Shown: positions 1 through 28,047 of the stretch, in pieces | How the letters are laid out: every line of letters begins with the position of its first letter | How positions within the stretch are numbered: position 1 is the stretch's first letter | IMG/VR virus record: IMGVR_UViG_3300030202_003189 | Coordinates: 124,001 to 188,000 of that record | Direction: 5' to 3' (one strand) | Length of the DNA: 64,000 bases | The notes under the pieces: model-generated | Told to the model about the DNA's origin: nothing | What the model saw: the letters and a program-made list of their open reading frames with translations, nothing else | Databases searched by the model: none | Made by a program: the position numbers and the translations under genes

Positions 1-974
1 GTTGGGATGAATATAGGATAACAAGAACAAATGCTGACACATATATAATAGGAGGGACAGACTACGGCACATTCTGGTATAATCAGAGTTTTACAACATC
101 CACTTGTCAAGTAACTGATTATTATGCTTACTATGATGCCATGAGGAAACTAGCCAATCCAGAGGCGACACCAAGTAGCGTATTTACAACACCAGGTATA
201 GATTATACAAATAATTTAACATTGGTTAATCGAGCAAAAGAAATGATAGAAAATGATAAAGGAGACTCGATTTATATTGTAACTTCAGATAACCCAAGAA
301 ATCAAACAGTAGATGAAGCTGTAGATAATTTAGAAAACGCAGCATTAAATAGTAGTTATATGGCTACGTATTGGCCTTGGGTAAGGTATAACGATACTGA
401 AAATAACGTAAGAATATATATTCCACCTACAGCTAATGTTGTTAGAAATTTAGCATTAACTGATAATGTATCATTCCCGTGGTTCGCAACAGCTGGTTAT
501 AATAGAGGTAAACTGGATGTTGATAGGGCACAAACAAAACTAACTCAGATTAACAGAGACGACCTTTATGAGGCAAGAATAAACCCAATAGCCACATTTA
601 ATGGTGCGGGGGTTATTATATGGGGAAATAAAACTTTACAAACAACACAATCAGCTTTAGATAGAATTAATGTAAGACGACTTATGTTAGACCTTAAAAC
701 TAAAGTTAAAGATATAGGGTTACAATTATTATTTGAACAGAACGACGCTATTGTAAGACAACAATTCTTATCTTTAATTAATCCAGTTCTAGAAGAAGTA
801 AGGGCAAATAGAGGATTAACAGATTTCAGGGTAGAACTAAATTCAGATGTTAACGAACTAGACACCAACTCTATGACAGGTAAAATATTTGTTAAACCAA
901 CTAGAACACTTGAATTTATAGAAGTTGAGTTTAACATAACACCATCGAGTACATCATTCACTGACTTAACATAA
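1..974 (+). CDS. Contractile tail sheath protein (T4 gp18-like), C-terminal part; gene starts upstream of the window
   Basis: Frame is open from nt 3 (WDEYRITRTN...) through the annotated ATG at 141. Sheath C-terminal motifs: YWPW, PPT, WFATAGYNRG, RDDLYEARINPI, IWGNKTLQ, SALDRINVRRL, LFEQND, IFVKPTRTLEFI. Confidence 0.95.
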   Translation, partial: WDEYRITRTNADTYIIGGTDYGTFWYNQSFTTSTCQVTDYYAYYDAMRKLANPEATPSSVFTTPGIDYTNNLTLVNRAKEMIENDKGDSIYIVTSDNPRNQTVDEAVDNLENAALNSSYMATYWPWVRYNDTENNVRIYIPPTANVVRNLALTDNVSFPWFATAGYNRGKLDVDRAQTKLTQINRDDLYEARINPIATFNGAGVIIWGNKTLQTTQSALDRINVRRLMLDLKTKVKDIGLQLLFEQNDAIVRQQFLSLINPVLEEVRANRGLTDFRVELNSDVNELDTNSMTGKIFVKPTRTLEFIEVEFNITPSSTSFTDLT

Positions 975-979
975 TCACT

Positions 980-1762
980 ATGAGTAGAAAGTTATTATAT
1001 GAAATAACAATGAGAGCTTATAGTTTTGACTGGGATGATAATATTCTGCACATGCCAACCATGATTAACATGGAAAAAAGAATGGGTAATGGTTGGGAAT
1101 TGGTTAAATTAACAACTGGAGAATACGCGGAATTAAAAGATAATGAAGATTATAGATACCCAGAAGGGGACATTAGGAAAGCTTTTAGTGAGTTTGATGA
1201 CGACGAAGGATTTCTTAAGAATGTAGAAGACAGTCTAAGAAAAAAAGATTTTGCTCCAAGTTTTAACGACTTCAAAGAAGCAGTAATAAAGGCAAAACCA
1301 ATATCAATTATTACAGCGAGACCACAATCCCCAACAACTCTAAAGAAAGGAGTTTCAATGATAATTAATACTGATTTTAGTGATGAAGAAATCGATGAAA
1401 TGGTTAGAAATGTAGAAGAAAACTATGGATTTACTGGTGATTCAGATGAAATTATTGATAAATATATTGAATCAAACTACTATTACCCAGTTTCATTTAG
1501 GGATAGAAACGCCGATATTAAAAAAGGAAAGGGAGACGCTTTAGATAATTTTGTTGAAAATATTGTTAAATCTTTTGAAAAAATGGATAAAAAACTATAT
1601 AATAAAATGAGTGTTGGGTTTAGTGATGATGATGTAGACAACGTAGAAGAAATGATAAAAAAAGTAGAAAATGAAATGGCGGAAAAATATCCCGGAGTTA
1701 AATTTTTTATATATGATACCTCTGAAAGGGGTAAAAACAAATTAATAGTACATACAACTTAG
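980..1762 (+). CDS. HAD-superfamily phosphatase/hydrolase
   Basis: Motif I FDWDDNI (DxD), motif II IITAR, Lys motif, motif IV GFSDDD. Confidence 0.75.
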   Translation: MSRKLLYEITMRAYSFDWDDNILHMPTMINMEKRMGNGWELVKLTTGEYAELKDNEDYRYPEGDIRKAFSEFDDDEGFLKNVEDSLRKKDFAPSFNDFKEAVIKAKPISIITARPQSPTTLKKGVSMIINTDFSDEEIDEMVRNVEENYGFTGDSDEIIDKYIESNYYYPVSFRDRNADIKKGKGDALDNFVENIVKSFEKMDKKLYNKMSVGFSDDDVDNVEEMIKKVENEMAEKYPGVKFFIYDTSERGKNKLIVHTT

Positions 1763-1780
1763 ATAATTTTATATTTAGTT

Positions 1781-1788
1781 ATATTTAT
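1781..1788 (+). promoter_or_regulatory. ATATTTAT motif (candidate phage promoter) upstream of tail tube
   Basis: Motif recurs in 8 intergenic gaps. Confidence 0.5.
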
Positions 1789-1830
1789 AGTTGTATTCAA
1801 TATAATAATACAAATAAAAAAAAATAGAAA

Positions 1831-2319
1831 ATGGCAGACTTACTAATGAAAATGCCGGTTCCTTACGAACCAAAAAGAAAGAATCGGTTTATAATGAAAT
1901 TTCCTTCTGACTTAGGAATAGCAGAATGGATAGTATCTAGTGCGGCTAGACCATCAATAACAATTAACGAAGTTGAGATTCCATTTCTTAACACTAAAAC
2001 TTTCGTAGCTGGACAATTCCAATGGGAAACAATTGATGTTACCTTTAGAGATCCTATCGCACCTTCTTCATCACAAGCGTTGATGGAATGGGTTAGATTA
2101 CACGCAGAATCAGTAACAGGTAGAATGGGATATGCGGCAGGATACAAAAAGAAAGTAGATTTATTCATGTTAGACCCAACAGGTGCTATCGTGGAAAATT
2201 GGGAATTAAGAGGAACTTTCTTAACTAATGTTAATTTTGGTGATTTAGATTATAGTGGTGATGATTTGGCAGATGTTTCTGCAACACTACGTTTTGATAG
2301 AGCAATCTTAAAGTACTAA
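1831..2319 (+). CDS. Tail tube protein (T4 gp19-like)
   Basis: 162 aa with EPKRKNRF, RPSI..E.EIPFLN, AG..WE.I.VTFRD, QALMEW, YKK...L.MLDP.G..VE.W, FGDLDYS, LRFDRA; downstream of sheath. Confidence 0.93.
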   Translation: MADLLMKMPVPYEPKRKNRFIMKFPSDLGIAEWIVSSAARPSITINEVEIPFLNTKTFVAGQFQWETIDVTFRDPIAPSSSQALMEWVRLHAESVTGRMGYAAGYKKKVDLFMLDPTGAIVENWELRGTFLTNVNFGDLDYSGDDLADVSATLRFDRAILKY

Positions 2320-2346
2320 ACATTATAACAAAAATATATTTCAATA

Positions 2347-2375
2347 TAAGGGCCTATTTAGGTCCTTAATTGTTT
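2347..2375 (+). terminator. Putative intrinsic terminator/hairpin after tail tube
   Basis: TAAGGGCCT-ATTT-AGGTCCTTA stem (one G.U pair) followed by ATTGTTT. Confidence 0.55.
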
Positions 2376-2411
2376 ACAAAGTGTTACACTTTACTATTCT
2401 TAGTAAATAAA
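2371..2411 (+). promoter_or_regulatory. Putative promoter upstream of tail chaperone (same class as 23217)
   Basis: TGTTTACA, 16-bp spacer, TATTCT, then TAGTAAATAAA. Confidence 0.5.
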
Positions 2412-2431
2412 CTGTATTAAAAAAAAAAGTT

Positions 2432-3190
2432 ATGTCAGAAAACAAAAATGAATTTGTCGTACCATTCGACGTTATTGAACTTCCTTCAAAAGGGTTATTA
2501 TACCAAAATTGTGGTGGGTCAATAAAAATCGAGTATATGACTGCTGAGGATGAAAACATTCTAACCTCACCCAACCTAGTACAATCAGGCAAGGTTCTTG
2601 ATGTATTAATGGAACGTAAAATCAAAGAAGAAGGACTCAACGCTAAAGACCTTTTACTTGGTGATAGAAACGCAATTATGGTGTTTTTAAGGTCCACTGC
2701 TTATGGTGAGATGTATCCAGTTAAATTAACCGACCCTTCAACAGGAGAAGAATTTGAAACTGAAATCGATCTATCCAAATTAGAAGTAAAACAAATTGGT
2801 GCGTCTCCTGATGAAAACGGACTATTCTCCTTCGACTTACCAAAAACTAAAAAGACGATAAAATTTAGATTACTAACTGCACGAGATGAAGAAGACTTGG
2901 TTAAATCAGAAGAGAAAAGAAAGAAATTACTACAGAATAAAGTCTCACAACTCCTAACATCAAGATTAGCCCTACAAATTATGGACGTAGACGGCAATAA
3001 GGACAAAAGTTATATACAACAATTTGTTCAGTATTTACCAGCATTCGATTCTTTAGAATTAAGAAAATATATGGAAGAAATCGAGCCGGGTATAGATCTG
3101 AGGGCAGACGTGGAGTCTCCTTCAGGTGCCAGCTTTCGCGCTCTCGTTCCAATTACAGTCAGATTTTTTTGGCCTAACATCGAGTTATAA
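2432..3190 (+). CDS. Tail assembly chaperone / baseplate hub assembly protein (T4 gp26-like)
   Basis: LPSKG..Y, YMTAEDENIL, DLLLGDRNAI...LR..AYG, F.LP.....IKFRLLT..DE, C-terminal FFWP; lies between tube and tape measure. Confidence 0.8.
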   Translation: MSENKNEFVVPFDVIELPSKGLLYQNCGGSIKIEYMTAEDENILTSPNLVQSGKVLDVLMERKIKEEGLNAKDLLLGDRNAIMVFLRSTAYGEMYPVKLTDPSTGEEFETEIDLSKLEVKQIGASPDENGLFSFDLPKTKKTIKFRLLTARDEEDLVKSEEKRKKLLQNKVSQLLTSRLALQIMDVDGNKDKSYIQQFVQYLPAFDSLELRKYMEEIEPGIDLRADVESPSGASFRALVPITVRFFWPNIEL

Positions 3191-11909: not shown

Positions 11910-12227
11910 ATGAGCTTATATTATAATAGATATCACAATATGACCAACGACGGAAAACCAAAACCGATGCCGTTTATAAAATTACCTAATAAATCAACCG
12001 ATAAATTTATAAAATACGAACAAGGGGTTACCAGGTTTGATAAGTTGAGCAATCAGTACTATGGGAACTCATTACATGGGTGGTTAATTATGCAAGGAAA
12101 TGCAGAATTGGGTGGTTTAGAGTTTACTATACCTGAGGGAACAATCATTAGAATACCATTCCCATTCAAAAAGTCTTTACAAGATTACGAGAATGCAGTA
12201 AATAGATATCTTAAACTAAATGGTTAA
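11910..12227 (+). CDS. LysM-like baseplate wedge protein (T4 gp53 / P2 gpX-like)
   Basis: 105 aa: TRFDKLSNQYYGNSLHGWLIMQGN...IPEGTIIRIP; sits between tube initiator and hub. Confidence 0.85.
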   Translation: MSLYYNRYHNMTNDGKPKPMPFIKLPNKSTDKFIKYEQGVTRFDKLSNQYYGNSLHGWLIMQGNAELGGLEFTIPEGTIIRIPFPFKKSLQDYENAVNRYLKLNG

Positions 12228-12230
12228 AAT

Positions 12231-15200
12231 ATGGGTGTAAATTTAATTGATCCGAATGAAGAGATAAGAAAATATGTTGGTGGAGGCGCTGACCTGCAAT
12301 TCCCTGGTAATAATAATGCGGGTTCGGTAACAGTACCCCCAGAAGATTTAGTACCCTATGCTAATTTAAGAGTTATTCTTCCGGGAAGAAGTGTAATAGT
12401 TGATAATGTTGCTGACCAAGTCCAAAATCAAGCAGAGATAGGGTTTATAGTACCATCTAAATTACCTCCTGAAAATAAAGGAAAAATGGGAACATCATGG
12501 ACTGAGATAGGAGGATTATCAGGATTCATGAAAGAGAAAGATGGATCGTATACGGTTGATGGATTAGGGAATCTCCAAAGAGAAGGGACATGGGGTGAAA
12601 CATTTGGAATAACAGACATCTCAGTTAAACTTAATGCGTCTTTTGAACCCCAAGTATTCATTAGTTTTGTTGATATTAGAGGTGCTTCCCTAATGGAACC
12701 AGGACTAAATTCTCCATACGCCGCATTTTTCCATATGCCATACCCATTATTTACTTTAGACCTAAAAGGGTATTACGGTAAAGGGATTAGCTATAAACTA
12801 CACCTAATGAAATTCAATTCAAAGTTTGATGCAGAAACAGGGAATTTTATTATTAACTGTGAATTTATTGGGTTTACGTTTACCTATCTTGCGGATTTGG
12901 CTGCAATATACTCAGATGTTGGTCCAGATCTTTATGGGCAATACGTTACTTCAGATCCTAACTATTTCCAACAAATAGGTAATGCAGGTAGTGGTTCTGG
13001 GAAACCGTGGCCAGAAGGTACAATGACTTTAGGTCCATATCTTAATAATATTGCTGACATGGCAGCAAAAATGGAGGCAATAGAGAATGATGAGGTTGTC
13101 CAAGACCACAAAGATATGGTTGATGCTGTCACATCATTAAAAGCGGTTATTGCATATTGGAAAGGTACCACTGTTAATAATATACGAAAAGATGGTAGTG
13201 ATGATATATACACTTATGACCCACATAATGAAACGTTAACTGTAACTGAATGTCTTTCTGCTAGTACAAAAACTTTATTAGCTGATTTGGAGTGTAAAAA
13301 GAAAAGAGCCGCCAATCAGAATGGATATTATCATGATCTTCTATTAACAATTAAAGGGTATGCAGACAAAACTAATAATAATCCAGATGTGGAAAAAGTC
13401 TTAGTAGAAAAAGCGTCAGGAGCCTATCGACCATATGCTACCTCTGTTTTCGCGTCCATACCTGATGGTGCAAAGACTAAAATAAATGGTCCCGAAGGGG
13501 CTCCATTACCAGCAGTTAGTCTAATAAAAACAAAATTCGATGGACCTGTCAAATGGGATCACGATTATAATCCTAATACTCCCGATGCTTATGGTGACGA
13601 TGGTGGTAATAAGGGTGGGGCGGTAATCTTATCAGATTATGATGACTCAACCGCCGATGCTGGGACTGGTGCTAATGGATGTGTTCAAGTTATTGCTAAG
13701 GAATTTTTAGATGGGGCAAAGGAGTCATTAGCATTTGCAGAAATGCGATTAGTAGAACTCGCTAAAGAGAAAAAGATACAAGAAGAAACTGTTAGATTGA
13801 ATTCATTGGTTATGCCCCCTACTTTGGAGAATGTATTTAAGTTAATATTGAATGGAGTGGATGGTTTTAATTCAACAGTAACTAATGTAGGTAAAATGGC
13901 AAATAAACAACATCAGGATGACGGGCGTTTAAGGGCTAAGTTAAGAGAATCAGGTACAGGAACAGACATTAAAGAAAATCAAAAACAAGTTTTTCCTTTT
14001 CCATTAGTATATAAAACGGTAACTCAGGGAACAAGTTCAACAACGAACGACTCAGACGCAACACTTAGGACAGTAAAAATATTTCCAGGTGAAAAAAATG
14101 CAGGTGGTGGTGAGTACACTTATCCAGATTATACAACTGATCCCTTTAAGTGGCCAGAGATTACTCTTGTTGAAAGATTGATACATACATTAATTGAAAA
14201 AACACGTCAAATAAATAGTACATTTAGTGAGGAAGAAGGATTTAGTGATGACGCTGGATATGTTGCTGCGACTGTTGAAGAAACACCACCTTCAGGTAAT
14301 CCATATGGAAAATTAACAGATGTTGATAAACAAATTATTCCATTAGTAATGTTAAGAACTATGTTACGATTAGGTAATTCTAATCTACTTAATAGTTCTG
14401 GTTATGGATCTATAGGTAAACAATTAGGAAATTTTACGAATATGGATATGTCGGATGCGACTGGAACGTATTCTTGGTATAACGCTCATAACTATTCGGA
14501 AACTGGTGACAATGAACTCATTACGGAACTAGGTAGGATGGAGGGAGAAACACTAATTCAAGGTATAGAAGACGATGCAACAAACGTCCGACTCGATGCT
14601 CTATATACAAAATTAACAGGAAATGCTGTTACTCAACAGGTTCCTAGCGGAACTAAGGGAAGATCAAAAGCTTGGCAGTTATATAAAGAAGCTGGGTATG
14701 ACACAAGGGGTTCGGGAATTAGTTGTGTGAGTACCGCATCAGATGCACAGAAGGAAGATACAGTGGGATGTCATTACATGTTTACCAATTTTGGTAACAA
14801 CACCCCAGTACAACAAGATGGAGCAACAGGAACAATTTTAGCAGGAACTTACAGTTTCTATGGGTGTAATTATAAAAATCAGAGTGGAGAACAGATTCTA
14901 AATGACTATGGGTATTATTTACCAAATGTAGAGGTAGAATTAAGTGGAGATATAAATTATGATCCATGTGTAACTCCAGAAACAAATAGTGGAGCGAGTG
15001 TATGTCCAGATTTTTGGATAACAGGAGTTGGGAGTAGTAATAACTTGGTGAGTTCTGTAGAAATATCAGGAGGATTATCAGAAGCGGTTCAAAACTACTA
15101 TGGTTTTAATACTCGTGCATTTGGAGGGAACCCAAAATTTACATCAGATATATGGATGATGATGGCACTCACAGGTGATATGACTAGTGCGACGGAGTAT

Positions 15201-18200
15201 GGTGGAGGTGATGACTCAATCAAGAAAACCGGACATTTCAAAACACCAAAATATATATTAGGAAAATACGGTACAGTTGATTATAATTGGGATAAATGGG
15301 GGAATTGGGACTGGTTCTCATACTACAATCCAATTATTGCTGATGGAAAAATCTCCCAAGGAGATACTAACAGTGAAGACAAGAGCACTTATATGAAACC
15401 TGATCAGTTTAGTCCTCTGGCGGTTTTCTACTCCGACGGAACAAAATACAGTGATAGATCATCAAACGAAGCACCATACACGGATGTGCAAACTTTTTTA
15501 TTAGAAGATGCTTTATGGATGAGAAATGACTGGGAAAATGAATTATATAGTAGTCAATTCCCTGTCATGCCTGCTGATCCTTTAATTACCGCATACACTA
15601 CGAGAGTGGAGTTAGATAATACTGATAAGAATTCTAAATTATATACTAGTGGTGCAGATACTGCAGGTTATCGTGAAGTCTTAAACGATAAGGCGTCTGG
15701 GGTGGCAGACCCAAGAGCGGCCAGTAATATAGCACTAGGTTACCTATATATAAATAATTGTGGTAAATACTTTAGTTTAAGTTATATGCACAGGGCCCGT
15801 GATAATAAACCATGGGACCAATTTAACTTAGGAAAATTATTACACAACTCAGGAGGATACCTTAAATTACCACAGTCTGTAATTCTTACCTTAGGGTCGT
15901 TATTATATCGTTATGATGAAACAAATGATATAATAGATTGGCCAAACTATTTTAATAGAACAGGGAAGGGGAATACGGATCTTAATGGTCATGATTGGGG
16001 GGTAAATACCGTCATGTATCAAATACCACGAAAAGATGAAAGACCAATGCCAGAACCTTACTTTAGACTCGGCGGAGGTATGACCCCAGACACCAGGAGA
16101 AAGTTTGCCGCTTCTCAAGACATAGAACAATGGCGAACCGCTGGTGACCTCAATAACACATTACACTTTTTGGCGGGTGGGTGTGTGACCTCTTATGGGG
16201 ATAAAATGACCTTTGGTAGTTGGTGTGGTGGTGGTGCACTTAGCCTTGCAAGCATAACAAACGCTACCGCTTTCCATTTCTACAATAACCTCACAAATTT
16301 TTTCTGTCCTGGATGTAACATTCATGACGATAAAGGCGACTTTCCTAACTACGGATTTTATGAGAAATTACCAGAATGGTTAATAAACGCCCCAAAATAC
16401 ATAAGAGAGAGACTTAAGACAGAATTTGTGTCATGGGCTACAGGCACCAATCAACACGATAAAGGACATTTTGAAATGCACCCTTCATTCCCAGAATTAA
16501 AGAGGTTAATGAAAGAAACCACAACAGTATTAGGTTGTGACCCTAATGAGAGTGGGTGTACTCCAGGTCTTAAATCCGATGATGGAAATGTGCAAATGGG
16601 CCCAACAACAGTAGGACCTAGTTATACAGAGAATATGGCCCCAGACAGTAGATTATATACTACTTTTTATAGTACCGGAGACTATTGGCTTCATAACAAC
16701 GACACTGGTTCTACAGACGAAAATGATATTAACAGAGGTATATGTACTATGTACACTGAACCGTGGGGTGCTGTTCATCCATATTTTATGACAGGTCATG
16801 CATCCAATAAAGCAAAAACTTTTACGTCACGAGAAATGGAAGGACAACATCAAAAAACAGGTACTACTAAAAAGAAAACTCTCGTGATAAACTTCGTAAA
16901 TGCATTTTCAAATTTAAGGAGTTCTCAAAAAGGTACCACGAATTTTATACAGCGTAAGGGACCTGCAGACGTATCAAAGGCTGAATTTACCTATACATTA
17001 CCTTTATTATGGAATGGTTGGGTGAATATGAGATGGCAAGGTTCTGGGGAAGTACCTGATAAATACGGAACAGAAGGATTCTTTAATACCATAACAAAAG
17101 ATACAATAAAGAGTTATGAGGATTTACGAAAACACCACCAAGCTAAACACTCAAAGTCTCCAGGTTATGGTATTTATGAAACATGGGGAATGGCTAACGT
17201 ATATTACTATATTAGAAAAGCAAGTCACACGAGTAATGTAGTAGTAGGAAATGGTTTTAATAGGAAGTACATAAACAACTGGGATGGAATTGGGTCAATA
17301 GTAACAGCTTTTAATGATTCGATTCAGGGATTTAACCAAGTTGGAAATGAAGTTTATAAAAATATTCATTTTCAGAGTGAGGGGTGTGCGTTTAATTTTA
17401 ATCCTGGGACGGCTATGGGTAACCAAATACCAAGAAAAAGGTTTACTGCGGATCCTGCAGATGGAGACTGGGCATACTCCTATGAAATATATGAAGAAGC
17501 TGGACTAGGTGGAATTAATCAAGATACAGAAACATTTATTGGGGGAGGAGATGGAAACGGAGTTCAGTTCATTCCAAATTTTTACATACCTAAGATGCAA
17601 TACTTAGCAACAGCCAAAAATAACACCGCCGACTATGTTGCTAATGAATTATATATCCAAACCAAAGACTTCATGCAAAGAATAGTTGAAATAAAAAATC
17701 CTTCATGGAGATATTGGATGGGATGGAAAGAGAACGATAACTACGTAAACTCAGTATTTACAACTTCAACACACGCTGATAGGTTTTTTGGTGGATTTTT
17801 AGCTGCGATAAACGAATATCTCGCATCTCAAATTAAAAGTGGTGCACAACAGACGGCCCGAGTGGATAAATTGGATATATTAAACGATAACGACATTAAG
17901 TTAGATACTTATTTAACTGTTAAAAATCTACATGATAAATGGTTATGTGAACCACAACAATCGGCTAGAAATAATTTAACCACAGGAAATGCTAGAGAGG
18001 CTAGTAAAATTGGGTGGTTATTTGACCAATTTAGTTTTGTTGATAGGGCGTATAACGATATTAGACATAAATTTATTGACCCATCACCCCTCTTAAATCT
18101 TAAAAAGAATCCTAAAATGAGTTTATATACACTAATATATGACCTCATAGTACATAATCAATTTGAATTCTTCCCCTTACCTTCTAATATAGACTTTTCA

Positions 18201-20471
18201 CCAGAGGAGTTTAGACAGGCATTTACACCGTTTCTAACAGTTAATGAGAGAGACATGAATAAAAATCCTAGGTTCTATATTATGTATATGGGTGGTTTTT
18301 CAGATAGTCTTGATGTTGACAGCACAGATTACCAATATAGTAACGACGGATTTGATATTGATAATGAGTGTATAGATTGTCCAGCTGACTACTTCGGCGA
18401 AGAAATTTCTAAAAAATATGGTGATAGTTTAGTGTTCGGTCAACTATTGAGTGAGGGAAAAATGAAATGTGAGAGTGGTGAATGTGGTAGTGGTGATATT
18501 AAAAAAGCACCACAATTAGTACCACAAACTGGACATTGGGTATGTTGGAGTGAGGATGCGACAGGAGGTACATGTAAAGTTAGGACTCAGAATGTTACGG
18601 CTTTCAGAGTGGCCTTTGGACAAGATAACCAAAACTTCTTCAAGTCTGTTTCTCTAGATCAAGCAGAATTCCAAGAAACACAGGAATCGTTAGAACTGAT
18701 AGATGCTTTAGCAAAAGAAGAAGGTACTTCTAAGGATCCTATGTTAAAAGGACAAAACCTATTTAATGTATACCAAAAAAGAAGTTATACTTGTAGTGTA
18801 GATGCTTTCGGAATGATGAACATCCTACCTTTACAATACTTTCAACTAGATCAAGTCCCTATGTTTCATGGGGCGTACATTATAACAAATGTTGACCACA
18901 CCATCACACCAGGAGAGTTTCAAACAAATTTCAAAGGAACTAGAATATCACGTTCTGTTGTACCCTACGTATCCAATTTTATTACAAATACTCTTATTGT
19001 AGAGTCAGATAATCCAGAAATTAGTTATGGACAAGGTGATGTAAACTATACCGTTTTAGATGGAAATGTTGATAGGGTGGGTGTATGGATGGATAGTAAA
19101 GTTACTAACGCATCAATAAATAATTTTGTAGTCGGTGCGGGAGGTAATAGTGTGGGTATTGAACTAAATAGTAGTTGGCCTAATTATAAAAAGGATATTG
19201 GAAAAATCTCTCCAGTTAGTGGGAATAAAGTTACATGTGCGACAAAATATATGGGAGAAACATGGCATTGGCAACCAATTCATACAGGAACACAATATAG
19301 TCCAAATTCAAGATATTCATTAGATGAACTTAAAGAAGCGTGTGTTAAGTTAGCAAAAAAGAACGTTTTTATATTTATATGGTTATATTTTGTACCTACG
19401 AAATCTTATGTTGAGCCTATGTGTGGCGGAACAGGAATAGAAAGTTATGACCCTAAAAAAGATTGGGTTGATTGGGAGGCGAAAGGGGCTTCGGTACCAC
19501 CTAGTTTACCTCAGTTAGTGAAACAATTAAATGATGCTTGTAAGGCAGATTCTGAAGTTGGAAAAAATTGTATTGGTGCGGTAGAGTTTGATTTAGAGGC
19601 TCATTATACAAATACAAAATATGAAGGGAGTAATACTACGATGGTAGATGGGTGTTATACAGCGTGGAGGAATCAACAAGAGAATGTTTATGGATCTTAT
19701 AATAATGTTAAGAAAAAAGATTTGGCACTAAAAGTTATGGCAAAACTACGACAAGATTTACCATCTGATTGTCAAATAGGTATATCTACCATTATGAATA
19801 ATCCTGGTAAGGATGAAAAACTTAAATCAGAGATCAGAGATAACGATACTAACTATTGGAAAGGTGTGGTGTGTGCAGAATATGCATTACAATCAGACTA
19901 TGTTGCGGCTCAAGCATATTCTCACCCAAGATGTGAAGAAGGTAAAGATGAAATGTGTAAATCATGCACTTCAGATAATCAGTGTAGTGGAGACAATTTC
20001 TGTCAAGGAAGTCCTGATGGTATGTATGAGGGAGATAGACCTATGGGTAAAAGATTTTATACCAATAAAGTATGTCAAAGCCCTACATACAAGTGGGATG
20101 GATGGGCTGGTACAGGAGTTACTGGAAGACCTGGACTTTACGCTCGTTATGTTAAGGCCTTACAAGAGTCTACCTGGTTAGGTCACGACGCATCCTCAGG
20201 TAAACCAGAATTTGTTTGTGGTTTAGCAGGGTATGATAAGAAATGGAATAACCATACCCCTGCCGATGGGGCTACCGAAGATTGGAATGGATGTACCGAT
20301 GAGGTTGCTAATGGTATAAAAGCAAAAGAAGTAAGATATTGGTCATATCTTAATACTTTTAGTAATGGTGGTAAAGGAGGGGCAAGAGGAAGAATGGCAA
20401 ATCAAAATGGTGGAGATGGACTTTGGCCATACGGTTGGAGAGACTTTGTTAAGGCAAGAACAACCACATAA
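12231..20471 (+). CDS. Giant baseplate hub protein (gp27/gpD-like) with C-terminal GH18-like glycoside hydrolase domain
   Basis: N-terminal FGITDI.VK.N.SF.P.V.I.FVDIRG..L and PYPLF.L.LKGYYGK; hub C-terminal segment YTC.V...G...I.PLQYF.L..VPMF.GAY.IT.V.H.I.PG.F.T.F.G.R; last ~470 aa has AVEFDLE, DYVAAQAY, GLAGY, YWS. Confidence 0.7.
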   Translation: MGVNLIDPNEEIRKYVGGGADLQFPGNNNAGSVTVPPEDLVPYANLRVILPGRSVIVDNVADQVQNQAEIGFIVPSKLPPENKGKMGTSWTEIGGLSGFMKEKDGSYTVDGLGNLQREGTWGETFGITDISVKLNASFEPQVFISFVDIRGASLMEPGLNSPYAAFFHMPYPLFTLDLKGYYGKGISYKLHLMKFNSKFDAETGNFIINCEFIGFTFTYLADLAAIYSDVGPDLYGQYVTSDPNYFQQIGNAGSGSGKPWPEGTMTLGPYLNNIADMAAKMEAIENDEVVQDHKDMVDAVTSLKAVIAYWKGTTVNNIRKDGSDDIYTYDPHNETLTVTECLSASTKTLLADLECKKKRAANQNGYYHDLLLTIKGYADKTNNNPDVEKVLVEKASGAYRPYATSVFASIPDGAKTKINGPEGAPLPAVSLIKTKFDGPVKWDHDYNPNTPDAYGDDGGNKGGAVILSDYDDSTADAGTGANGCVQVIAKEFLDGAKESLAFAEMRLVELAKEKKIQEETVRLNSLVMPPTLENVFKLILNGVDGFNSTVTNVGKMANKQHQDDGRLRAKLRESGTGTDIKENQKQVFPFPLVYKTVTQGTSSTTNDSDATLRTVKIFPGEKNAGGGEYTYPDYTTDPFKWPEITLVERLIHTLIEKTRQINSTFSEEEGFSDDAGYVAATVEETPPSGNPYGKLTDVDKQIIPLVMLRTMLRLGNSNLLNSSGYGSIGKQLGNFTNMDMSDATGTYSWYNAHNYSETGDNELITELGRMEGETLIQGIEDDATNVRLDALYTKLTGNAVTQQVPSGTKGRSKAWQLYKEAGYDTRGSGISCVSTASDAQKEDTVGCHYMFTNFGNNTPVQQDGATGTILAGTYSFYGCNYKNQSGEQILNDYGYYLPNVEVELSGDINYDPCVTPETNSGASVCPDFWITGVGSSNNLVSSVEISGGLSEAVQNYYGFNTRAFGGNPKFTSDIWMMMALTGDMTSATEYGGGDDSIKKTGHFKTPKYILGKYGTVDYNWDKWGNWDWFSYYNPIIADGKISQGDTNSEDKSTYMKPDQFSPLAVFYSDGTKYSDRSSNEAPYTDVQTFLLEDALWMRNDWENELYSSQFPVMPADPLITAYTTRVELDNTDKNSKLYTSGADTAGYREVLNDKASGVADPRAASNIALGYLYINNCGKYFSLSYMHRARDNKPWDQFNLGKLLHNSGGYLKLPQSVILTLGSLLYRYDETNDIIDWPNYFNRTGKGNTDLNGHDWGVNTVMYQIPRKDERPMPEPYFRLGGGMTPDTRRKFAASQDIEQWRTAGDLNNTLHFLAGGCVTSYGDKMTFGSWCGGGALSLASITNATAFHFYNNLTNFFCPGCNIHDDKGDFPNYGFYEKLPEWLINAPKYIRERLKTEFVSWATGTNQHDKGHFEMHPSFPELKRLMKETTTVLGCDPNESGCTPGLKSDDGNVQMGPTTVGPSYTENMAPDSRLYTTFYSTGDYWLHNNDTGSTDENDINRGICTMYTEPWGAVHPYFMTGHASNKAKTFTSREMEGQHQKTGTTKKKTLVINFVNAFSNLRSSQKGTTNFIQRKGPADVSKAEFTYTLPLLWNGWVNMRWQGSGEVPDKYGTEGFFNTITKDTIKSYEDLRKHHQAKHSKSPGYGIYETWGMANVYYYIRKASHTSNVVVGNGFNRKYINNWDGIGSIVTAFNDSIQGFNQVGNEVYKNIHFQSEGCAFNFNPGTAMGNQIPRKRFTADPADGDWAYSYEIYEEAGLGGINQDTETFIGGGDGNGVQFIPNFYIPKMQYLATAKNNTADYVANELYIQTKDFMQRIVEIKNPSWRYWMGWKENDNYVNSVFTTSTHADRFFGGFLAAINEYLASQIKSGAQQTARVDKLDILNDNDIKLDTYLTVKNLHDKWLCEPQQSARNNLTTGNAREASKIGWLFDQFSFVDRAYNDIRHKFIDPSPLLNLKKNPKMSLYTLIYDLIVHNQFEFFPLPSNIDFSPEEFRQAFTPFLTVNERDMNKNPRFYIMYMGGFSDSLDVDSTDYQYSNDGFDIDNECIDCPADYFGEEISKKYGDSLVFGQLLSEGKMKCESGECGSGDIKKAPQLVPQTGHWVCWSEDATGGTCKVRTQNVTAFRVAFGQDNQNFFKSVSLDQAEFQETQESLELIDALAKEEGTSKDPMLKGQNLFNVYQKRSYTCSVDAFGMMNILPLQYFQLDQVPMFHGAYIITNVDHTITPGEFQTNFKGTRISRSVVPYVSNFITNTLIVESDNPEISYGQGDVNYTVLDGNVDRVGVWMDSKVTNASINNFVVGAGGNSVGIELNSSWPNYKKDIGKISPVSGNKVTCATKYMGETWHWQPIHTGTQYSPNSRYSLDELKEACVKLAKKNVFIFIWLYFVPTKSYVEPMCGGTGIESYDPKKDWVDWEAKGASVPPSLPQLVKQLNDACKADSEVGKNCIGAVEFDLEAHYTNTKYEGSNTTMVDGCYTAWRNQQENVYGSYNNVKKKDLALKVMAKLRQDLPSDCQIGISTIMNNPGKDEKLKSEIRDNDTNYWKGVVCAEYALQSDYVAAQAYSHPRCEEGKDEMCKSCTSDNQCSGDNFCQGSPDGMYEGDRPMGKRFYTNKVCQSPTYKWDGWAGTGVTGRPGLYARYVKALQESTWLGHDASSGKPEFVCGLAGYDKKWNNHTPADGATEDWNGCTDEVANGIKAKEVRYWSYLNTFSNGGKGGARGRMANQNGGDGLWPYGWRDFVKARTTT

Positions 20472-22040: not shown

Positions 22041-22778
22041 ATGGCAAGAGTAATAAAATTAAAAGAATCAGATATCACTAAGATCGTTAAAAAAATATTA
22101 AAAGAAAGAAAATTTGAAATGCCTGATTTATCAGGATTACCACCGGACCACTATCCAGACTTTGATAATCCTTTTGGTGATGGAACGACATGGAACACTG
22201 GCGGAGGTGGTGGAGGAACTACATGGGGAGGTAATAAAGGAGATAAATCTAAAACACATCCAGGTAGACGTGATTATGAAGGAAATGGTGGTGTAGAAAT
22301 TACTTTTGAGACCATGAAGGAGGCTTTAGGTGATTGTAGAACTATGGATGATTGTTTAAGAGGGTATGAGGCTTTATATAATAGAGGTAAAAAAGGAAAA
22401 ATACAAGGTATGCCAACACCACAAGAAATGAGTATGAAGGTTATGGAAATTGAAGAATCAGATCCAGATCCATCTCCAGCTATGTTTATATGGCTTCTAG
22501 TTGGTACTGCGGTAGCTTTAGGTATTCGTTGGATAAATGGTACTAATCCATGGACATGGAATTCTGATGTAACATTAAAAGAAAATATAAATTTAGTAGG
22601 GAAGTCAAAATCAGGTATTAATATTTATGAGTTTGATTATATTAATAAAAAATACGGTAACGGAAGATATCGTGGAGTTATGGCACAAGAAGTACCATCA
22701 GCGTCTTTTGTTGGACCAGAAGGTACTTTAATGGTAGACTATTCAAAATTAGATGTACAATTTGAAGAATTAAATTAA
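22041..22778 (+). CDS. Protein with LKESD leader, predicted transmembrane helix and C-terminal peptidase S74 intramolecular chaperone domain
   Basis: SDVTLKENI (Ser/Lys dyad spacing) at 22563, IYEFDY, GVMAQEV, VDYSKL; hydrophobic AMFIWLLVGTAVALGIRW just before it. Confidence 0.8.
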   Translation: MARVIKLKESDITKIVKKILKERKFEMPDLSGLPPDHYPDFDNPFGDGTTWNTGGGGGGTTWGGNKGDKSKTHPGRRDYEGNGGVEITFETMKEALGDCRTMDDCLRGYEALYNRGKKGKIQGMPTPQEMSMKVMEIEESDPDPSPAMFIWLLVGTAVALGIRWINGTNPWTWNSDVTLKENINLVGKSKSGINIYEFDYINKKYGNGRYRGVMAQEVPSASFVGPEGTLMVDYSKLDVQFEELN

Positions 22779-23290: not shown

Positions 23291-24109
23291 ATGAGTAATA
23301 TACTAGATTCAATTCTTAAGCAGTACGAGTCCAACAAGTCTGGAGTAGGGACCGAAAAAAAGAAAACAGACCTTAGAAAATATTTCGCACCCTTTTTACC
23401 AAAAGGAGAGGCGAATGGAGAAAGAACAGTTAGAATTTTACCTCCTAAAGATGGGGCATCACCATTCCAAGAAGCTTGGTTCCATGAGGTACAAATTGAT
23501 GGTAAATGGCAAAAACTTTATGACCCAGGAAAAAATGATAACGAAAGAAGTCCTATTACTGAAGTTAATGAAGCATTGTTAATGACAGGAGACCCAGAAG
23601 ATAAAGTTCTTGCAAGACAATACAGACCAAGAAAATTTTATGTTGTTAGAGTTATCGATAGAGATAAAGAAGAAGAAGGGGTTAAATTCTGGAGATTTAA
23701 GCACAATTATAAAGGAGATGGGATAATGGACAAATTAATTCCACTATTTCAAAAGAAAGGAGATATTACCGACCCAAGAGAGGGGAGAGATATTAACCTA
23801 ATTCTTAAAGCGGTTAAATTACCAAGTGGTCATGGAACTTACACAACAGTATCAACAATAATGACTGAAGATCCTTCTATGTTAACTACTGATACAGAAA
23901 AAGCTAAAAATTGGATGGCTAATACTGAAACATTTAGAGATGTTTATGTAAAGAAAGATGTAGACTTTCTTGAAAAGGTAGCTAAAGGAGAAAATCCTTA
24001 TGAAAGAAAAGAGGAAAGTACACCAAAACCAACTTCTAGTGTTAGCGATACAACAATATCAGAATTAGATAAAGGTACTGAGATTAACATGGATGATATG
24101 CCATTTTAA
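23291..24109 (+). CDS. ssb: Single-stranded DNA-binding protein (T4 gp32-like)
   Basis: RILPP...SPF....FH, VIDRD.EEEGVKFW, DITDP.EGRD, acidic C-terminal tail DDMPF; upstream of recombinase. Confidence 0.85.
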   Translation: MSNILDSILKQYESNKSGVGTEKKKTDLRKYFAPFLPKGEANGERTVRILPPKDGASPFQEAWFHEVQIDGKWQKLYDPGKNDNERSPITEVNEALLMTGDPEDKVLARQYRPRKFYVVRVIDRDKEEEGVKFWRFKHNYKGDGIMDKLIPLFQKKGDITDPREGRDINLILKAVKLPSGHGTYTTVSTIMTEDPSMLTTDTEKAKNWMANTETFRDVYVKKDVDFLEKVAKGENPYERKEESTPKPTSSVSDTTISELDKGTEINMDDMPF

Positions 24110-24120
24110 TAATTATAGAT

Positions 24121-25119
24121 ATGGCTAAATCAATAAAGAAAAAAACATTCTCATTAGAAGACCTACAAGGAAAGTATAGTACAAAGGCAAAATACAAAGA
24201 AGATAGTTTCTTTGATGTTGGCGAAGCATTTTACAAAGCTTGTGGAATACCAGGACCAGCAGAAGGACATATAAATGTATTTTTAGGACATTCTGACACT
24301 GGAAAAACCACGGCTTTAGTTAGGTCAGCTATAGACGCTCAAAAAAAAGGAAAATTACCCGTTTTTATAATAACTGAACAGAAATGGGATTTCCAACACG
24401 CAAAATTAATGGGTTTTGATTGTGAATTAAACGCAACAGGAGAGTGGAGTGGTACATTCTTATTTAATGATGGATTTTCTTATATAGAACAAATTACTGA
24501 TTATATAAATGAATTAATAGATGAACAACAAAAAGGAAATATACCTTATGATTTAGTTTTCTTTTGGGATTCGGTAGGTTCAGTACCTTGTAAAATGACT
24601 TTTGAGGGTAAAGGTGGAAAAATGCACAATGCGAGTACATTAGCAGATAAAATAGGAATGGGGATTAATCAAAGAATTACAGGATCAAGAAAAGAAAGTG
24701 AAAAGTTTACAAATACCTTAATAATTGTTAATCAACCATGGGTAGAATTACCAGATAATCCATTTAGTCAACCAAGAATTAAAATGAAAGGAGGGGAGGC
24801 AATATTTCTAAACTCCACACTAGTCTTTTTATTTGGAAATCAAAAAAATTCTGGAATATCAAAAATAAACGCCACTAAAAATGGACGTAAAGTAGCTTTT
24901 GCTACTAGAACTAAAGTCTCCATACTTAAAAATCATGTAAATGGTATTGGTTTTTCTGATGGTAGAGTAATCGTTACACCACATAGTTTTATTAATGATG
25001 ACGCTAACGATATAAAGAAGTACAAAGAAAGTCACTCAAGTTATTGGGTTGAGCAATTTGAAAAAGCTGGTGAGAAAGTAGATGATGGAAGTTTCGAACT
25101 AGTAGAATCCGATGTTTAA
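24121..25119 (+). CDS. recA: RecA/UvsX-like recombinase
   Basis: Walker A GHSDTGKTT, FIITEQK, Walker B FFWDSVG, IIVNQ, KGGEA, KNHVNG. Confidence 0.9.
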   Translation: MAKSIKKKTFSLEDLQGKYSTKAKYKEDSFFDVGEAFYKACGIPGPAEGHINVFLGHSDTGKTTALVRSAIDAQKKGKLPVFIITEQKWDFQHAKLMGFDCELNATGEWSGTFLFNDGFSYIEQITDYINELIDEQQKGNIPYDLVFFWDSVGSVPCKMTFEGKGGKMHNASTLADKIGMGINQRITGSRKESEKFTNTLIIVNQPWVELPDNPFSQPRIKMKGGEAIFLNSTLVFLFGNQKNSGISKINATKNGRKVAFATRTKVSILKNHVNGIGFSDGRVIVTPHSFINDDANDIKKYKESHSSYWVEQFEKAGEKVDDGSFELVESDV

Positions 25120-25137
25120 CCTTTTAATTACAATGAG

Positions 25138-26169
25138 TTGAGACGTAGAAATAATCAAAAAAATCTTGAAACCCTTGTAGTAGATGGAGATGCTCTTCTA
25201 AAAAGATCATTCTTCGGGGCTAAAAATGTTTTTAATGAAAAAAAAGAACATATCGGCGGACTATACCAATTTATCAATATCCTTAGAAAAACTTTATCAG
25301 AGAAGTATTATAATAAAGTTGTTGTTTTTTGGGATGGGGTAAATGGTAATTTAGCCCGACGTAAGATATATCCAAATTATAAATTGAATAGAAAAAAGAG
25401 TAGTAATTATGATTCAGACGCTTTTTTACGTCAGAAATTAAGAACACAACAATACTTAGAAGAATTATATATTAGACAATACGTTCATAAAGACACAGAA
25501 GCGGATGACCTTATTGCTGAATATTGTATAAACAAAAAGGAAAAAGAAATAATAACAATTTATACCGCAGATAGGGACCTCGTACAATTAATCAATGAAA
25601 AAGTTAGAGTATTTCTTTTAGATAAAAAGGAGTTAGTTACAGAGGATACCATTTTAGTAACAAGAGAATTAGAATACCTCCCCAAAAACGTATGTTTAAT
25701 TAAGATTCTTTTAGGAGACGCGTCCGATAACATATTAGGGATAAAGGGACTATCACCAAAAAGATTGGGTGAAATATCCCCAGAACTTAAAAGTCGAAAA
25801 GTTAACCTACAGGAAATTAAAGATATAGAATACGATGGGGATAATTGGAGAGTACGTAATGTATTAAATAACATTAAAACCGGAACAAGTAATGGAGGGG
25901 TATTTGGGGACGAACTCTATGAGATAAATAATAAGATAATAAGTTTAGAAGAACCTTTTATTGATGAAGATATTAGGAAAGATGTAAAAGATTTAGTAAA
26001 CTTAAATCTAGATCCTTCAGGACGAGATTACAAAAATGTAATAAAAATGATGATAGAAGATGGGTTAGTTAATGTGATACCAGCTTCATATGAAGATCAG
26101 TCAGAATTTTTAATACCATTTATAACACTTAAAAATAATGAAACAAAAAATGGAAAAGACAAGAAGTAA
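25138..26169 (+). CDS. 5'-3' exonuclease / flap endonuclease (Pol I N-terminal / T4 RNase H-like)
   Basis: LVVDGD, VFWDG, R..IYP.YK.NR, EADDLIA, TADRDLVQL, GDASDNI.GIKG (H3TH). Confidence 0.92.
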   Translation: MRRRNNQKNLETLVVDGDALLKRSFFGAKNVFNEKKEHIGGLYQFINILRKTLSEKYYNKVVVFWDGVNGNLARRKIYPNYKLNRKKSSNYDSDAFLRQKLRTQQYLEELYIRQYVHKDTEADDLIAEYCINKKEKEIITIYTADRDLVQLINEKVRVFLLDKKELVTEDTILVTRELEYLPKNVCLIKILLGDASDNILGIKGLSPKRLGEISPELKSRKVNLQEIKDIEYDGDNWRVRNVLNNIKTGTSNGGVFGDELYEINNKIISLEEPFIDEDIRKDVKDLVNLNLDPSGRDYKNVIKMMIEDGLVNVIPASYEDQSEFLIPFITLKNNETKNGKDKK

Positions 26170-26614: not shown

Positions 26615-26630
26615 AATAAAGATAAATAAT

Positions 26631-26638
26631 ATATTTAT
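26631..26638 (+). promoter_or_regulatory. ATATTTAT motif (candidate phage promoter)
   Basis: 19 nt upstream of helicase ATG. Confidence 0.45.
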
Positions 26639-26657
26639 TATTAAATAAATTAATAAA

Positions 26658-28031: not shown

Positions 28032-28047
28032 GAAAAATTTATAAAAA

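What the first reader, a model, noticed from the sequence alone, without database searches (positions are those of the whole stretch)
19068..20471. Giant hub protein ends in a GH18 (chitinase-like) TIM-barrel rather than a lysozyme
Seen: after the hub segment come VGVW, IFIWLY, IGAVEFDLE (19572-19598), IGIST, DYVAAQAY, FVCGLAGY and VRYWS in the order expected for a (beta/alpha)8 barrel, with Cys-rich loops. Known: GH18 enzymes carry DxxDxDxE on strand 4, a D..x(M/Q)xY motif on strand 6 and Trp on strand 8. Inference: the baseplate centre carries a GlcNAc-glycan hydrolase (peptidoglycan, capsule or chitin) with a variant ExDxE motif.
Basis: partly seen in the sequence, partly recalled or inferred. 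Interest (0 to 1): 0.65.

Follow-up and report, generated by a model that had tools for sequence, protein, structure and literature searches.

The report
Unclassified TIM-barrel glycosidase ending giant tail protein
The last 477 residues of a 2746-residue phage tail-module protein form a sugar-cutting barrel enzyme of an undescribed family, only distantly related to chitinases (GH18) and to the cell-wall enzyme Cwp19, and it most likely cuts the bacterial cell wall during infection.

Summary

Across 27 homologues the last Glu of EFDLE (E2456) is invariant. So are Q2561, G2664 and S2705. All conserved residues lie at the C-terminal strand ends, which is the catalytic face.

GH18 membership is not established:
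- No Pfam, PHROG or PDB sequence hit.
- Structure searches tie Cwp19 (best, Z 18.2) with GH5, GH1, GH42, GH53 and GH18.
- Profile-profile comparison gives GH18 84-89 % and GHL10 50-70 %. Different known families also score 76-80 % against each other.
- An independent subset of homologues prefers GHL10.

It is a new, rare TIM-barrel glycosidase family near GH18 and GHL10.

Stand-alone ~270-aa homologues point to peptidoglycan as the substrate. Four carry peptidoglycan-binding domains, two lie at the end of prophage tail modules, and one lies next to an endolysin-type peptidase. So "rather than a lysozyme" is misleading.

The gene lies in a contractile-tail module, but its "hub" identity could not be shown.

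The parts
12231..20471 (+). Giant ORF, 2746 aa (P0001), in a contractile-tail gene module. Its N-terminal 300 aa and aa 1900-2250 are the best conserved parts.
   Evidence: Homologues of 2614-2744 aa are known only from metagenomes.
19038..20468 (+). C-terminal (beta/alpha)8 glycosidase domain, aa 2270-2746.
   Evidence: AF2 model. Fold searches. Family alignments A2 and A5.
19077..19088 (+). Strand b1 motif VGVW (aa 2283-2286). W2286 is conserved in 26/27.
19371..19388 (+). Strand b3 IFIWLY (aa 2381-2386), followed by P2389 (23/27). There is no SxGG motif here.
19572..19598 (+). Strand b4 IGAVEFDLE. E2452 (26/27), D2454 (26/27) and E2456 (27/27, nt 19596-19598) is the proposed catalytic acid.
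   Evidence: Aligned to the DxDxE-type motif GVniDFEG of GH18 by hhalign.
19776..19790 (+). Strand b5 IGIST (aa 2516-2520). The S/T position is conserved.
19896..19925 (+). Strand b6 DYVAAQAYSH. Q2561 (27/27) and Y2563 (25/27) correspond to the QxYN/MxYD motif of GH18.
19926..20207 (+). Cys-rich insertion between b6 and b7 (aa ~2566-2659). It occurs only in the giant-phage clade, has four invariant Cys, and gives weak knottin-like hits.
   Evidence: The model confidence here is low.
20211..20234 (+). Strand b7 FVCGLAGY. G2664 is invariant and no acidic nucleophile is present.
20331..20345 (+). Strand b8 VRYWS. Aromatic W2704 (24/27 Trp, the rest Phe or Tyr) is followed by invariant S2705.
   Evidence: Parallels the Phe367-Ser368 cis-peptide of Cwp19 and the GH18 Trp.
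17928..19037 (+). Highly conserved segment before the enzyme domain (aa 1900-2269), ending in GAYIITNVDHTI.
11910..12227 (+). 105-aa ORF directly upstream with a weak match to a baseplate wedge subunit family.
   Evidence: phrog_7145 E 6.7e-5
3..3190 (+). Tail sheath (3-974), tail tube (1831-2319) and a baseplate-hub-family protein (2432-3190) that open the same gene block.
   Evidence: phrog_23 4e-50, phrog_4542 3e-28, phrog_150 2e-13

Best explanation
The C-terminal 477 residues of the 2746-aa tail-module protein are a catalytically competent (beta/alpha)8 glycosidase. The domain belongs to a rare sequence family with no Pfam, PHROG or PDB match, distantly related to GH18 chitinases and to GHL10 (Cwp19). 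The proposed mechanism is inferred. E2456, just past strand 4, is the general acid. D2454 and E2452 on strand 4 and Y2563 on strand 6 position and stabilise the substrate's N-acetyl group. There is no enzyme nucleophile on strand 7, which carries an invariant Gly instead. Catalysis would therefore be substrate-assisted on an N-acetylhexosamine polymer. The most likely substrate is the glycan strand of host peptidoglycan. The domain would be carried on the virion and would open the wall locally during tail penetration. The phage's separate Amidase_2 protein would serve as the endolysin. Shown here: the fold, the conservation pattern, homology to stand-alone lysin-like proteins, and the tail-module location of the gene. 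Inferred: substrate, chemistry, presence in the virion, and position at the baseplate centre.
For: Fold: the AF2 model has eight b/a units at pTM 0.70. It matches TIM-barrel glycosidases at Z 15-18.2, with Cwp19 best and a GH18 chitinase as the Foldseek top hit. Active site: all invariant or near-invariant columns of the 27-sequence alignment lie at C-terminal strand ends. Relationship: hhalign gives GH18 84-89 % (P 2-7e-6, 163-176 columns), aligning ExDxE with the template's GVniDFEG (DxDxE-type) motif, QAY with MGY, and GLAAY with GlPlY. GHL10 gives 50-70 %. GH25, GH5, GH20 and DUF4015 are below 8 % and GH114 ranges 3-37 %. Reversed-profile controls are below 0.5 %. Substrate: the stand-alone ~270-aa homologues are clearly homologous (hhalign 99.2 %, P 1e-19). 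P0024, P0033 and the two Polyangiaceae ORFs carry N-terminal PG_binding_1-type domains. P0031 and P0037 lie a few genes downstream of Baseplate_J, at the end of tail modules. The L013 copy follows a LysB4/Ply500-like L-Ala-D-Glu peptidase. Most lack signal peptides, as holin-dependent endolysins do. Location: sheath, tube, a hub-family gene and a wedge-family gene lie upstream in the same block. The genome has a separate Amidase_2 and a Peptidase_M23 but no Phage_lysozyme or SLT gene.
Against: No enzyme assay or virion proteomics exists. The model is only moderately confident (pLDDT 60.7) and its long inserts are unmodelled. Structure searches cannot separate GH families. The GH18 link is not robust: subset B scores 0.5 %. 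The peptidoglycan inference rests on distant homologues (17-26 % identity), whereas the phage domain has about 200 residues of extra loops that could change specificity. The hub or central-spike position is not demonstrated. The record is about 70 % complete, so the absence of other lysins is not proven.
Confidence: 0.6

Rival explanations
1. It is a true, divergent GH18 enzyme (chitinase or endo-beta-N-acetylglucosaminidase) acting on chitin or GlcNAc glycans.
For: GH18 is the best hhalign partner for three profile versions at 84-89 %. The DxDxE, QxY(N), b7 GlPxYG-like and b8 Trp motifs are collinear. The Foldseek top PDB hit is a GH18 chitinase, and several GH18 proteins appear among the viral hits.
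Against: The Pfam GH18 HMM gives no hit at E<=10 for any of the 27 members or in the genome. SxGG is absent. An independent subset scores 0.5 % against GH18 and 63.5 % against GHL10. Similarity is at the level seen between different families. Homologues are fused to peptidoglycan-binding modules, not chitin-binding ones.
Confidence: 0.1
2. It is a tail-borne depolymerase for a host surface polysaccharide (capsule, EPS, or a PNAG-like polymer) rather than for peptidoglycan.
For: TIM-barrel glycosidases on phage tails are often depolymerases. The phage-clade domain has about 200 residues of extra, Cys-rich loops around the cleft that the lysin-like homologues lack. Its structural neighbours include many polysaccharide hydrolases.
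Against: The catalytic constellation is identical to that of the stand-alone homologues, whose context is peptidoglycan. Depolymerases usually sit on fibres or spikes rather than at the end of a 2700-aa protein whose most conserved parts are aa 1-300 and 1900-2250. This last point is inference.
Confidence: 0.18
3. The substrate is peptidoglycan but the chemistry differs. It is a lytic transglycosylase like Cwp19, using the single acid E2456 and producing 1,6-anhydro-MurNAc, not a hydrolase.
For: Cwp19 is the top structural match: Z 18.2, 15 % identity, 262 residues. GHL10 is the second-best profile match, and the best for subset B. The constellation is the same as in Cwp19: acids on b4, Tyr on b6, Gly replacing the b7 nucleophile, and aromatic-Ser on b8. 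Cwp19 was reported as a lytic transglycosylase (PMC6016235).
Against: Pfam GHL10 does not hit. The b4 motif (ExDxE) and the QxY motif align better with GH18. Sequence cannot distinguish hydrolysis from transglycosylation.
Confidence: 0.2
4. The domain is a non-catalytic structural or lectin-like barrel, like the chitinase-like proteins.
For: Many GH18-like proteins are lectins. The domain is less conserved (24-42 % identity to the distant clade) than the N-terminal and aa 1900-2250 parts of the protein.
Against: The acid E2456 and the other cleft residues are invariant or nearly so across 27 sequences, including free-standing proteins that have no other domain.
Confidence: 0.04

Closest known systems
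GH18 (chitinases, endo-beta-N-acetylglucosaminidases; Pfam PF00704)
   Same: (beta/alpha)8 barrel. Acidic x-D-x-E motif at the end of strand 4 with the Glu just past the strand. QxY on strand 6. GL(A/P)xY on strand 7 with no enzyme nucleophile. Trp on strand 8. Best profile-profile partner (84-89 %).
   Different: The first acid is Glu, not Asp. There is no SxGG on strand 3, no upstream Asp of DxxDxDxE, and S/T instead of N/D after the Tyr. The Pfam model gives no hit. Similarity is no higher than between distinct families, and it is absent for one subset of the family.
GHL10 / Cwp19 of Clostridioides difficile (PDB 5oq2/5oq3; Pfam PF02638)
   Same: Top structural match (Z 17.8-18.2, rmsd 3.7-3.8 A, 262-266 residues, 13-15 % identity). 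It acts on peptidoglycan. It has acids on b4, Tyr on b6, a conserved Gly in place of the b7 nucleophile, and an aromatic-Ser pair on b8. Second-best profile match at 50-70 %.
   Different: The Pfam GHL10 model gives no hit. The b4 motif is DD in Cwp19 and ExDxE here. Cwp19 is an S-layer autolysin with cell-wall-binding repeats, not part of a virion protein.
Virion-borne tail lysins such as T4 gp5 (hub plus lysozyme) and phiKZ gp181 (giant protein with a C-terminal transglycosylase); comparison from general knowledge
   Same: A muralytic domain attached to a large tail or baseplate protein encoded in the contractile-tail module, with a separate endolysin elsewhere in the genome.
   Different: Those enzymes have lysozyme-like alpha+beta folds (GH24, GH23), whereas this is a TIM barrel. 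No homology to gp5, gp27 or gpD could be demonstrated for the rest of the protein.

Membership tests
GH18 | (beta/alpha)8 TIM-barrel catalytic domain | tested here: met
   The AF2 model has eight b/a units at pTM 0.70. It matches TIM-barrel glycosidases at Z 15-18.
GH18 | DxDxE (DxxDxDxE) motif on strand 4 with the catalytic Glu between b4 and a4 | tested here: inconclusive
   The variant is E2452-x-D2454-x-E2456 (26/27, 26/27, 27/27). The position matches, and hhalign aligns it to the GH18 template's GVniDFEG motif. The first Asp is replaced by Glu, and the upstream Asp (position -7) is not conserved.
GH18 | SxGG motif on strand 3 | tested here: not met
   Strand 3 ends in L-(W/Y)-x-x-P. No SxGG appears in any of the 27 sequences.
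GH18 | QxYN / MxYD motif on strand 6 (catalytic Tyr) | tested here: inconclusive
   Q-A-Y-(S/T) is present: Q 27/27, Y 25/27. The residue after the Tyr is S/T instead of N/D.
GH18 | Conserved Trp on strand 8 | tested here: met
   W2704 is Trp in 24/27 and aromatic in 27/27, followed by invariant Ser.
GH18 | Significant match to the family sequence model (Pfam PF00704) | tested here: not met
   No hit at E<=10 for the window protein or any of the 27 members. The six-frame search of the genome found none. hhalign gave 84-89 % for three profiles but 0.5 % for subset B, and cross-family background is 54-80 %.
GHL10 (Cwp19-like) | Significant match to Pfam PF02638 | tested here: not met
   No Pfam hit. 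hhalign gave 50-70 % over 72-138 columns.
GHL10 (Cwp19-like) | Active-site constellation: acids on b4, Tyr on b6, conserved Gly at the b7 end, aromatic-Ser on b8 | tested here: met
   E/D/E on b4, Y2563, G2664 and W2704-S2705, compared with Cwp19 D195/D196, Y297, G328 and F367-S368. The correspondence is by strand position, not by a residue-level superposition.
Clan GH-A (GH5/GH1/GH42/GH53) | Nucleophile Glu at the end of strand 7 and an N-E acid/base at the end of strand 4 | tested here: not met
   Strand 7 is G-L-A-(A/G)-Y with no conserved acid. hhalign to GH5 is below 8 %, although structural Z scores tie.
GH25 lysozymes | Profile similarity to PF01183, with the DxE motif in a (b/a)5b3 barrel | tested here: not met
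   hhalign is below 1 %. There is no Pfam hit.
GH13 (alpha-amylase superfamily) | Region II GFRxDxxxH with the Asp nucleophile, a b5 Glu and a b7 His-Asp | tested here: not met
   Only a chance-level hit to GlgX (E 0.61), aligning AVEFDLEAH with GFRFDLAAV. Arg is replaced by Glu, and there is no conserved b5 Glu or b7 HD.
Baseplate hub (gp27 / gpD / Phage_GPD) | Sequence or fold similarity of the non-enzymatic part to hub proteins | tested here: inconclusive
   No Pfam, PHROG or PDB hit. hhalign to Phage_GPD aligned only a 15-column motif at P 0.036. The AF2 model of aa 1830-2275 failed at pLDDT 39. Gene order places the gene in the tail module.

The most novel reading that the evidence does not exclude
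This domain and its roughly 30 known relatives are a new CAZy-level family of TIM-barrel peptidoglycan glycosidases, a link between GH18 and GHL10. The family would be used in two ways: as a virion-borne entry enzyme fused to giant tail proteins of uncultured jumbo myoviruses, and as free or PG-binding-domain-fused lysins in prophages and Polyangiaceae.
Probability: 0.45. Interest if true: 0.6.

Novelty: new variant of a known kind. Interest (0 to 1): 0.5.

Why it matters
Virion-borne and lytic phage muralytic enzymes are nearly all lysozyme-like, amidase or peptidase folds, and a TIM-barrel enzyme in this role is unusual. This family has no Pfam, PHROG or PDB match. A profile search of 1.8 billion representative proteins found only 19 hits at E<=0.001. 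The family has a clean, testable catalytic constellation. If it proves active on peptidoglycan, it would add a new glycosidase family. It would also give a sequence-level bridge between chitinase-type GH18 enzymes and the poorly understood GHL10/Cwp19 group, and it would annotate the business end of giant tail proteins in an uncultured jumbo-phage lineage. The small (~270 aa) stand-alone members would be convenient candidates for enzymology and structure work.

Tried and rejected
- **Family scans.** Pfam and PHROG scans of the whole protein, the C-terminal domain and all 27 family members found no glycosidase family. The only traces were single sub-threshold hits to EndoS TIM-barrel (E 0.17) and DUF5010 (E 0.0075).
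- **PDB sequence searches.** Searches with the single sequence and with profiles A2, A5, A6 and A7 gave only chance-level hits. The GlgX (GH13) hit that aligns AVEFDLEAH with region II was considered. It was rejected because the E-value is 0.61 and the other GH13 catalytic residues are absent.
- **GenBank phages.** tblastn or megablast with the gene, the enzyme domain, the N-terminus and aa 1900-2270 found nothing in 50,697 phage records.
- **Structure searches.** PDB Foldseek, VIA wide, VIA second look, ESM Atlas and BFVD all confirm a TIM-barrel glycosidase. None can separate families, because the top Z scores are tied within 1-2 units.
- **Language-model search.** It gave clan-A glycosidases at 0.86 for the enzyme domain, which is a lead only. 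For the N-terminus it gave noise (rhabdovirus nucleoprotein).
- **Hub test.** The AF2 model of aa 1830-2275 failed at pLDDT 39. hhalign to Phage_GPD was not significant. A weak phrog_52 'tail protein' trace recurred in three homologues at E 0.15-0.23. The hub assignment is left open.
- **Other families.** GH25, GH20, GH5, GH114 and DUF4015 were rejected as relatives by hhalign.
- **Neighbour genes.** Genes next to the small homologues are not conserved between loci; only the lysin-like gene is shared. No Baseplate_J gene was found in the two Polyangiaceae MAGs.
- **Failed call.** The search for related loci with alignment A3 failed for lack of a conserved stretch and was repeated with A4.
- **Not used.** The read-mapping, sequencing-run and complex-prediction tools were not used.


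Full report
**What is there.** The window is part of a 231-kb IMG/VR virus record, CheckV about 70 % complete. All large ORFs are on the + strand, at about 35 % GC. ORF 12231-20471 is one open frame of 2746 aa.

It lies in a contractile-tail block:
- tail sheath at 3-974
- tail tube at 1831-2319
- a baseplate-hub-family protein at 2432-3190
- three unassigned large ORFs
- a 105-aa ORF with a weak baseplate-wedge match at 11910-12227
- the giant gene itself

Downstream come a fibre-like ORF with a Peptidase_S74 chaperone, a gp32/UvsX/exonuclease/helicase/RNR replication island, a gp6-like wedge protein, and more giant ORFs. The giant protein has no relative among 50,697 GenBank phage records. 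It does have ten or more full-length relatives of 2614-2744 aa in metagenomes and IMG/VR contigs.

**Checking the observation.** IGAVEFDLE is aa 2448-2456, nt 19572-19598. An AlphaFold2 model of aa 2270-2746, built on a 12-sequence alignment, gave pLDDT 60.7 and pTM 0.70 with eight alternating strand/helix units.

The motifs fall on strands as follows, in domain numbering (1 = aa 2270):

| Motif | Strand | Residues |
|---|---|---|
| VGVW | b1 | 13-18 |
| IFIWLY | b3 | 111-117 |
| AVEFD | b4 | 179-185 |
| IGIST | b5 | 246-251 |
| YVAAQAY | b6 | 288-294 |
| FVCGLAG | b7 | 391-397 |
| VRYWS | b8 | 431-436 |

The Glu of FDLE (E187 of the domain, E2456 of the protein) lies two residues past the end of strand 4. 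That is the C-terminal mouth of the barrel. The strand-4 region is the most confident part of the model, with block pLDDT of 94-97.

Low-confidence stretches are the long insertions. Among them is a Cys-rich insertion between b6 and b7. The domain holds 16 of the protein's 42 Cys. The model matches solved TIM-barrel glycosidases at Z 15-18 over 250-300 residues.

**A wider family.** An exhaustive profile search of 1.8 billion representative proteins returned only 19 hits at E<=0.001. Besides the giant proteins, these include stand-alone proteins of 267-412 aa, and a further word-index search added nine more. They align over the whole barrel and are clearly homologous to the phage domain (hhalign 99.2 %, P 1e-19).

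In the 27-sequence alignment the conserved columns are:
- invariant: E2456, Q2561, G2664, S2705
- near-invariant: W2286, E2452, D2454, Y2563, A2666, and a GxG turn (G2627, G2629)
- aromatic in all 27: W2704 (Trp in 24)

Apart from the GxG turn, which lies in the loop between b6 and b7, all of these sit at C-terminal strand ends. That is the signature of a conserved active site. Compared with the ~270-aa minimal barrel, the phage clade has about 200 extra residues in loops after b2, b3, b4, b5 and b6.

**Which family?**
- None of the 27 members hits any Pfam glycosidase model, even at E<=10.
- The GH18 model finds nothing in the phage genome.
- Profile searches find nothing in PDB sequences.
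- Structure searches tie Cwp19/GHL10 (best, Z 17.8-18.2, 13-15 % identity) with GH5, GH1, GH42, GH53, GH164 and GH18. Foldseek's top PDB hit is a GH18 chitinase at E 2e-6.

I therefore built reference profiles of seven families from genome hits to their Pfam models and ran hhalign.

| Comparison | hhalign probability |
|---|---|
| New family vs GH18 | 84-89 % (P 2-7e-6, 163-176 columns, b3 to b7) |
| New family vs GHL10 | 50-70 % |
| New family vs GH114 | 3-37 % |
| New family vs GH5, GH25, GH20, DUF4015 | below 8 % |
| Reversed-profile controls | below 0.5 % |
| GH18 vs GHL10 | 76 % |
| GHL10 vs GH5 | 80 % |
| GH18 vs GH114 | 54 % |
| Independent subset (P0030-P0038) vs GH18 | 0.5 % |
| Independent subset (P0030-P0038) vs GHL10 | 63.5 % |

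The GH18 alignment pairs AvEfDlEg with the template's GVniDFEG (DxDxE-type) motif, vavQAYS with lfIMGYdyH, and limGLAaYdQkW with ilGlPlYG~~W. So the relationship to GH18 is real but at superfamily level, not family membership. The family sits between GH18 and GHL10.

Motif by motif against the GH18 signatures (PMC7334433):
- DxDxE is present as ExDxE.
- QxYN is present as QxY(S/T).
- The b8 Trp is present.
- SxGG is absent.

The same constellation is described for Cwp19: acids on b4, Tyr on b6, Gly replacing the b7 nucleophile, and an aromatic-Ser pair on b8 (PMC5765458).

**What it most likely does.** There is no acidic residue on strand 7. Together with the D-x-E pair and the Tyr, this argues for a single-acid, substrate-assisted mechanism on an N-acetylhexosamine polymer. 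GH18 hydrolases work this way, and Cwp19 was reported as a peptidoglycan lytic transglycosylase (PMC6016235).

The substrate inference comes from the small homologues:
- P0024 and P0033 carry N-terminal PG_binding_1 domains.
- The two Polyangiaceae genome copies have the same N-terminal module.
- One of those copies directly follows a LysB4/Ply500-like L-Ala-D-Glu endopeptidase with an SH3-like tail.
- P0031 and P0037 lie a few genes after Baseplate_J, at the end of tail modules. That is a usual place for a lysis gene.
- Most lack signal peptides, as holin-dependent endolysins do, and one has an N-terminal membrane anchor.

The phage itself encodes a separate Amidase_2 ORF and a Peptidase_M23 ORF, but no Phage_lysozyme or SLT gene, in the 231 kb available. 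The most economical reading is that the giant protein's C-terminal barrel is a virion-borne muralytic enzyme for entry, with the amidase as the endolysin. This is inference. A role as a surface-polysaccharide depolymerase cannot be excluded, because the phage clade's large loop insertions might retarget the cleft.

**The 'hub' claim.** The best conserved parts of the giant protein are aa 1-300 and aa 1900-2250, at up to 0.89 identity with a clade whose enzyme domain is only 0.24-0.42 identical. That suggests a structural core.

No tool recognised it. Pfam, PHROG and PDB gave nothing. A structure prediction of aa 1830-2275 failed at pLDDT 39. hhalign to Phage_GPD aligned only the short GAYIITNVEH motif at P 0.036. 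The tail or baseplate location is supported by gene order only. The central-hub position remains a hypothesis, and a separate baseplate-hub-family gene exists at 2432-3190.

**Verdict.**
- a catalytic TIM-barrel glycosidase with a GH18-like ExDxE/QxY/W constellation: yes
- a GH18 member: not established
- 'rather than a lysozyme': misleading, since peptidoglycan is the most likely substrate
- hub: unverified

Within the libraries searched here the domain represents an undescribed, rare family, best called a new variant of a known kind (phage muralytic or tail-borne glycosidases). Interest is moderate.

Noticed in passing
window 3-3190: Tail sheath C-terminus (3-974), tail tube (1831-2319) and a baseplate-hub-family protein (2432-3190) open the block that contains the giant gene. 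The phage is therefore a contractile-tailed jumbo phage.
   Followed up: partly
window 22041-22778: A 245-aa ORF ends in a Peptidase_S74 intramolecular chaperone domain (E 1.2e-5), typical of self-cleaving tail fibres or spikes.
   Followed up: no
window 23291-29958: A replication and recombination island (gp32-like SSB, UvsX-like recombinase, 5'-3' exonuclease, DnaB-like helicase, ribonucleotide reductase) is inserted between two structural gene blocks.
   Followed up: no
window 30780-55373: A gp6-like baseplate wedge protein (30780-32588) is followed by four giant ORFs (1508, 1730, 1370 and 1415 aa) that have no PHROG match at all.
   Followed up: no
window 12231-13130 and 17928-18980: The N-terminal 300 aa and aa 1900-2250 of the giant protein are far better conserved (0.5-0.89 identity to the distant clade) than the enzyme domain (0.24-0.42). 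They match no known family or structure.
   Followed up: partly
window 19926-20207: A Cys-rich insertion between strands 6 and 7 has four invariant Cys in the phage clade. It gives weak knottin, squash-inhibitor and carboxypeptidase-inhibitor-like hits. It is absent from the stand-alone homologues.
   Followed up: partly
L013 4639-6861 (Polyangiaceae MAG contig JBNKUV010000058.1): A LysB4/Ply500-like L-Ala-D-Glu peptidase with an SH3-like tail is directly followed by a PG-binding-domain fusion of the small TIM-barrel family. No Baseplate_J gene was found in that genome, so this may be a bacterial (predatory?) lytic pair rather than a prophage.
   Followed up: partly
G000 contig 1, 198261-198593 and 49983-50270 (outside the window): The phage record encodes an Amidase_2 ORF (214-aa frame), a likely endolysin, and a Peptidase_M23 ORF (199-aa frame). 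No Phage_lysozyme or SLT gene was found.
   Followed up: partly
L002 1-5848: The stand-alone homologue P0025 lies downstream of a 1968-aa SNF2/Eco57I-type helicase-methylase-like protein and a 1196-aa protein kinase. This neighbourhood looks like a defence island or mobile element.
   Followed up: no
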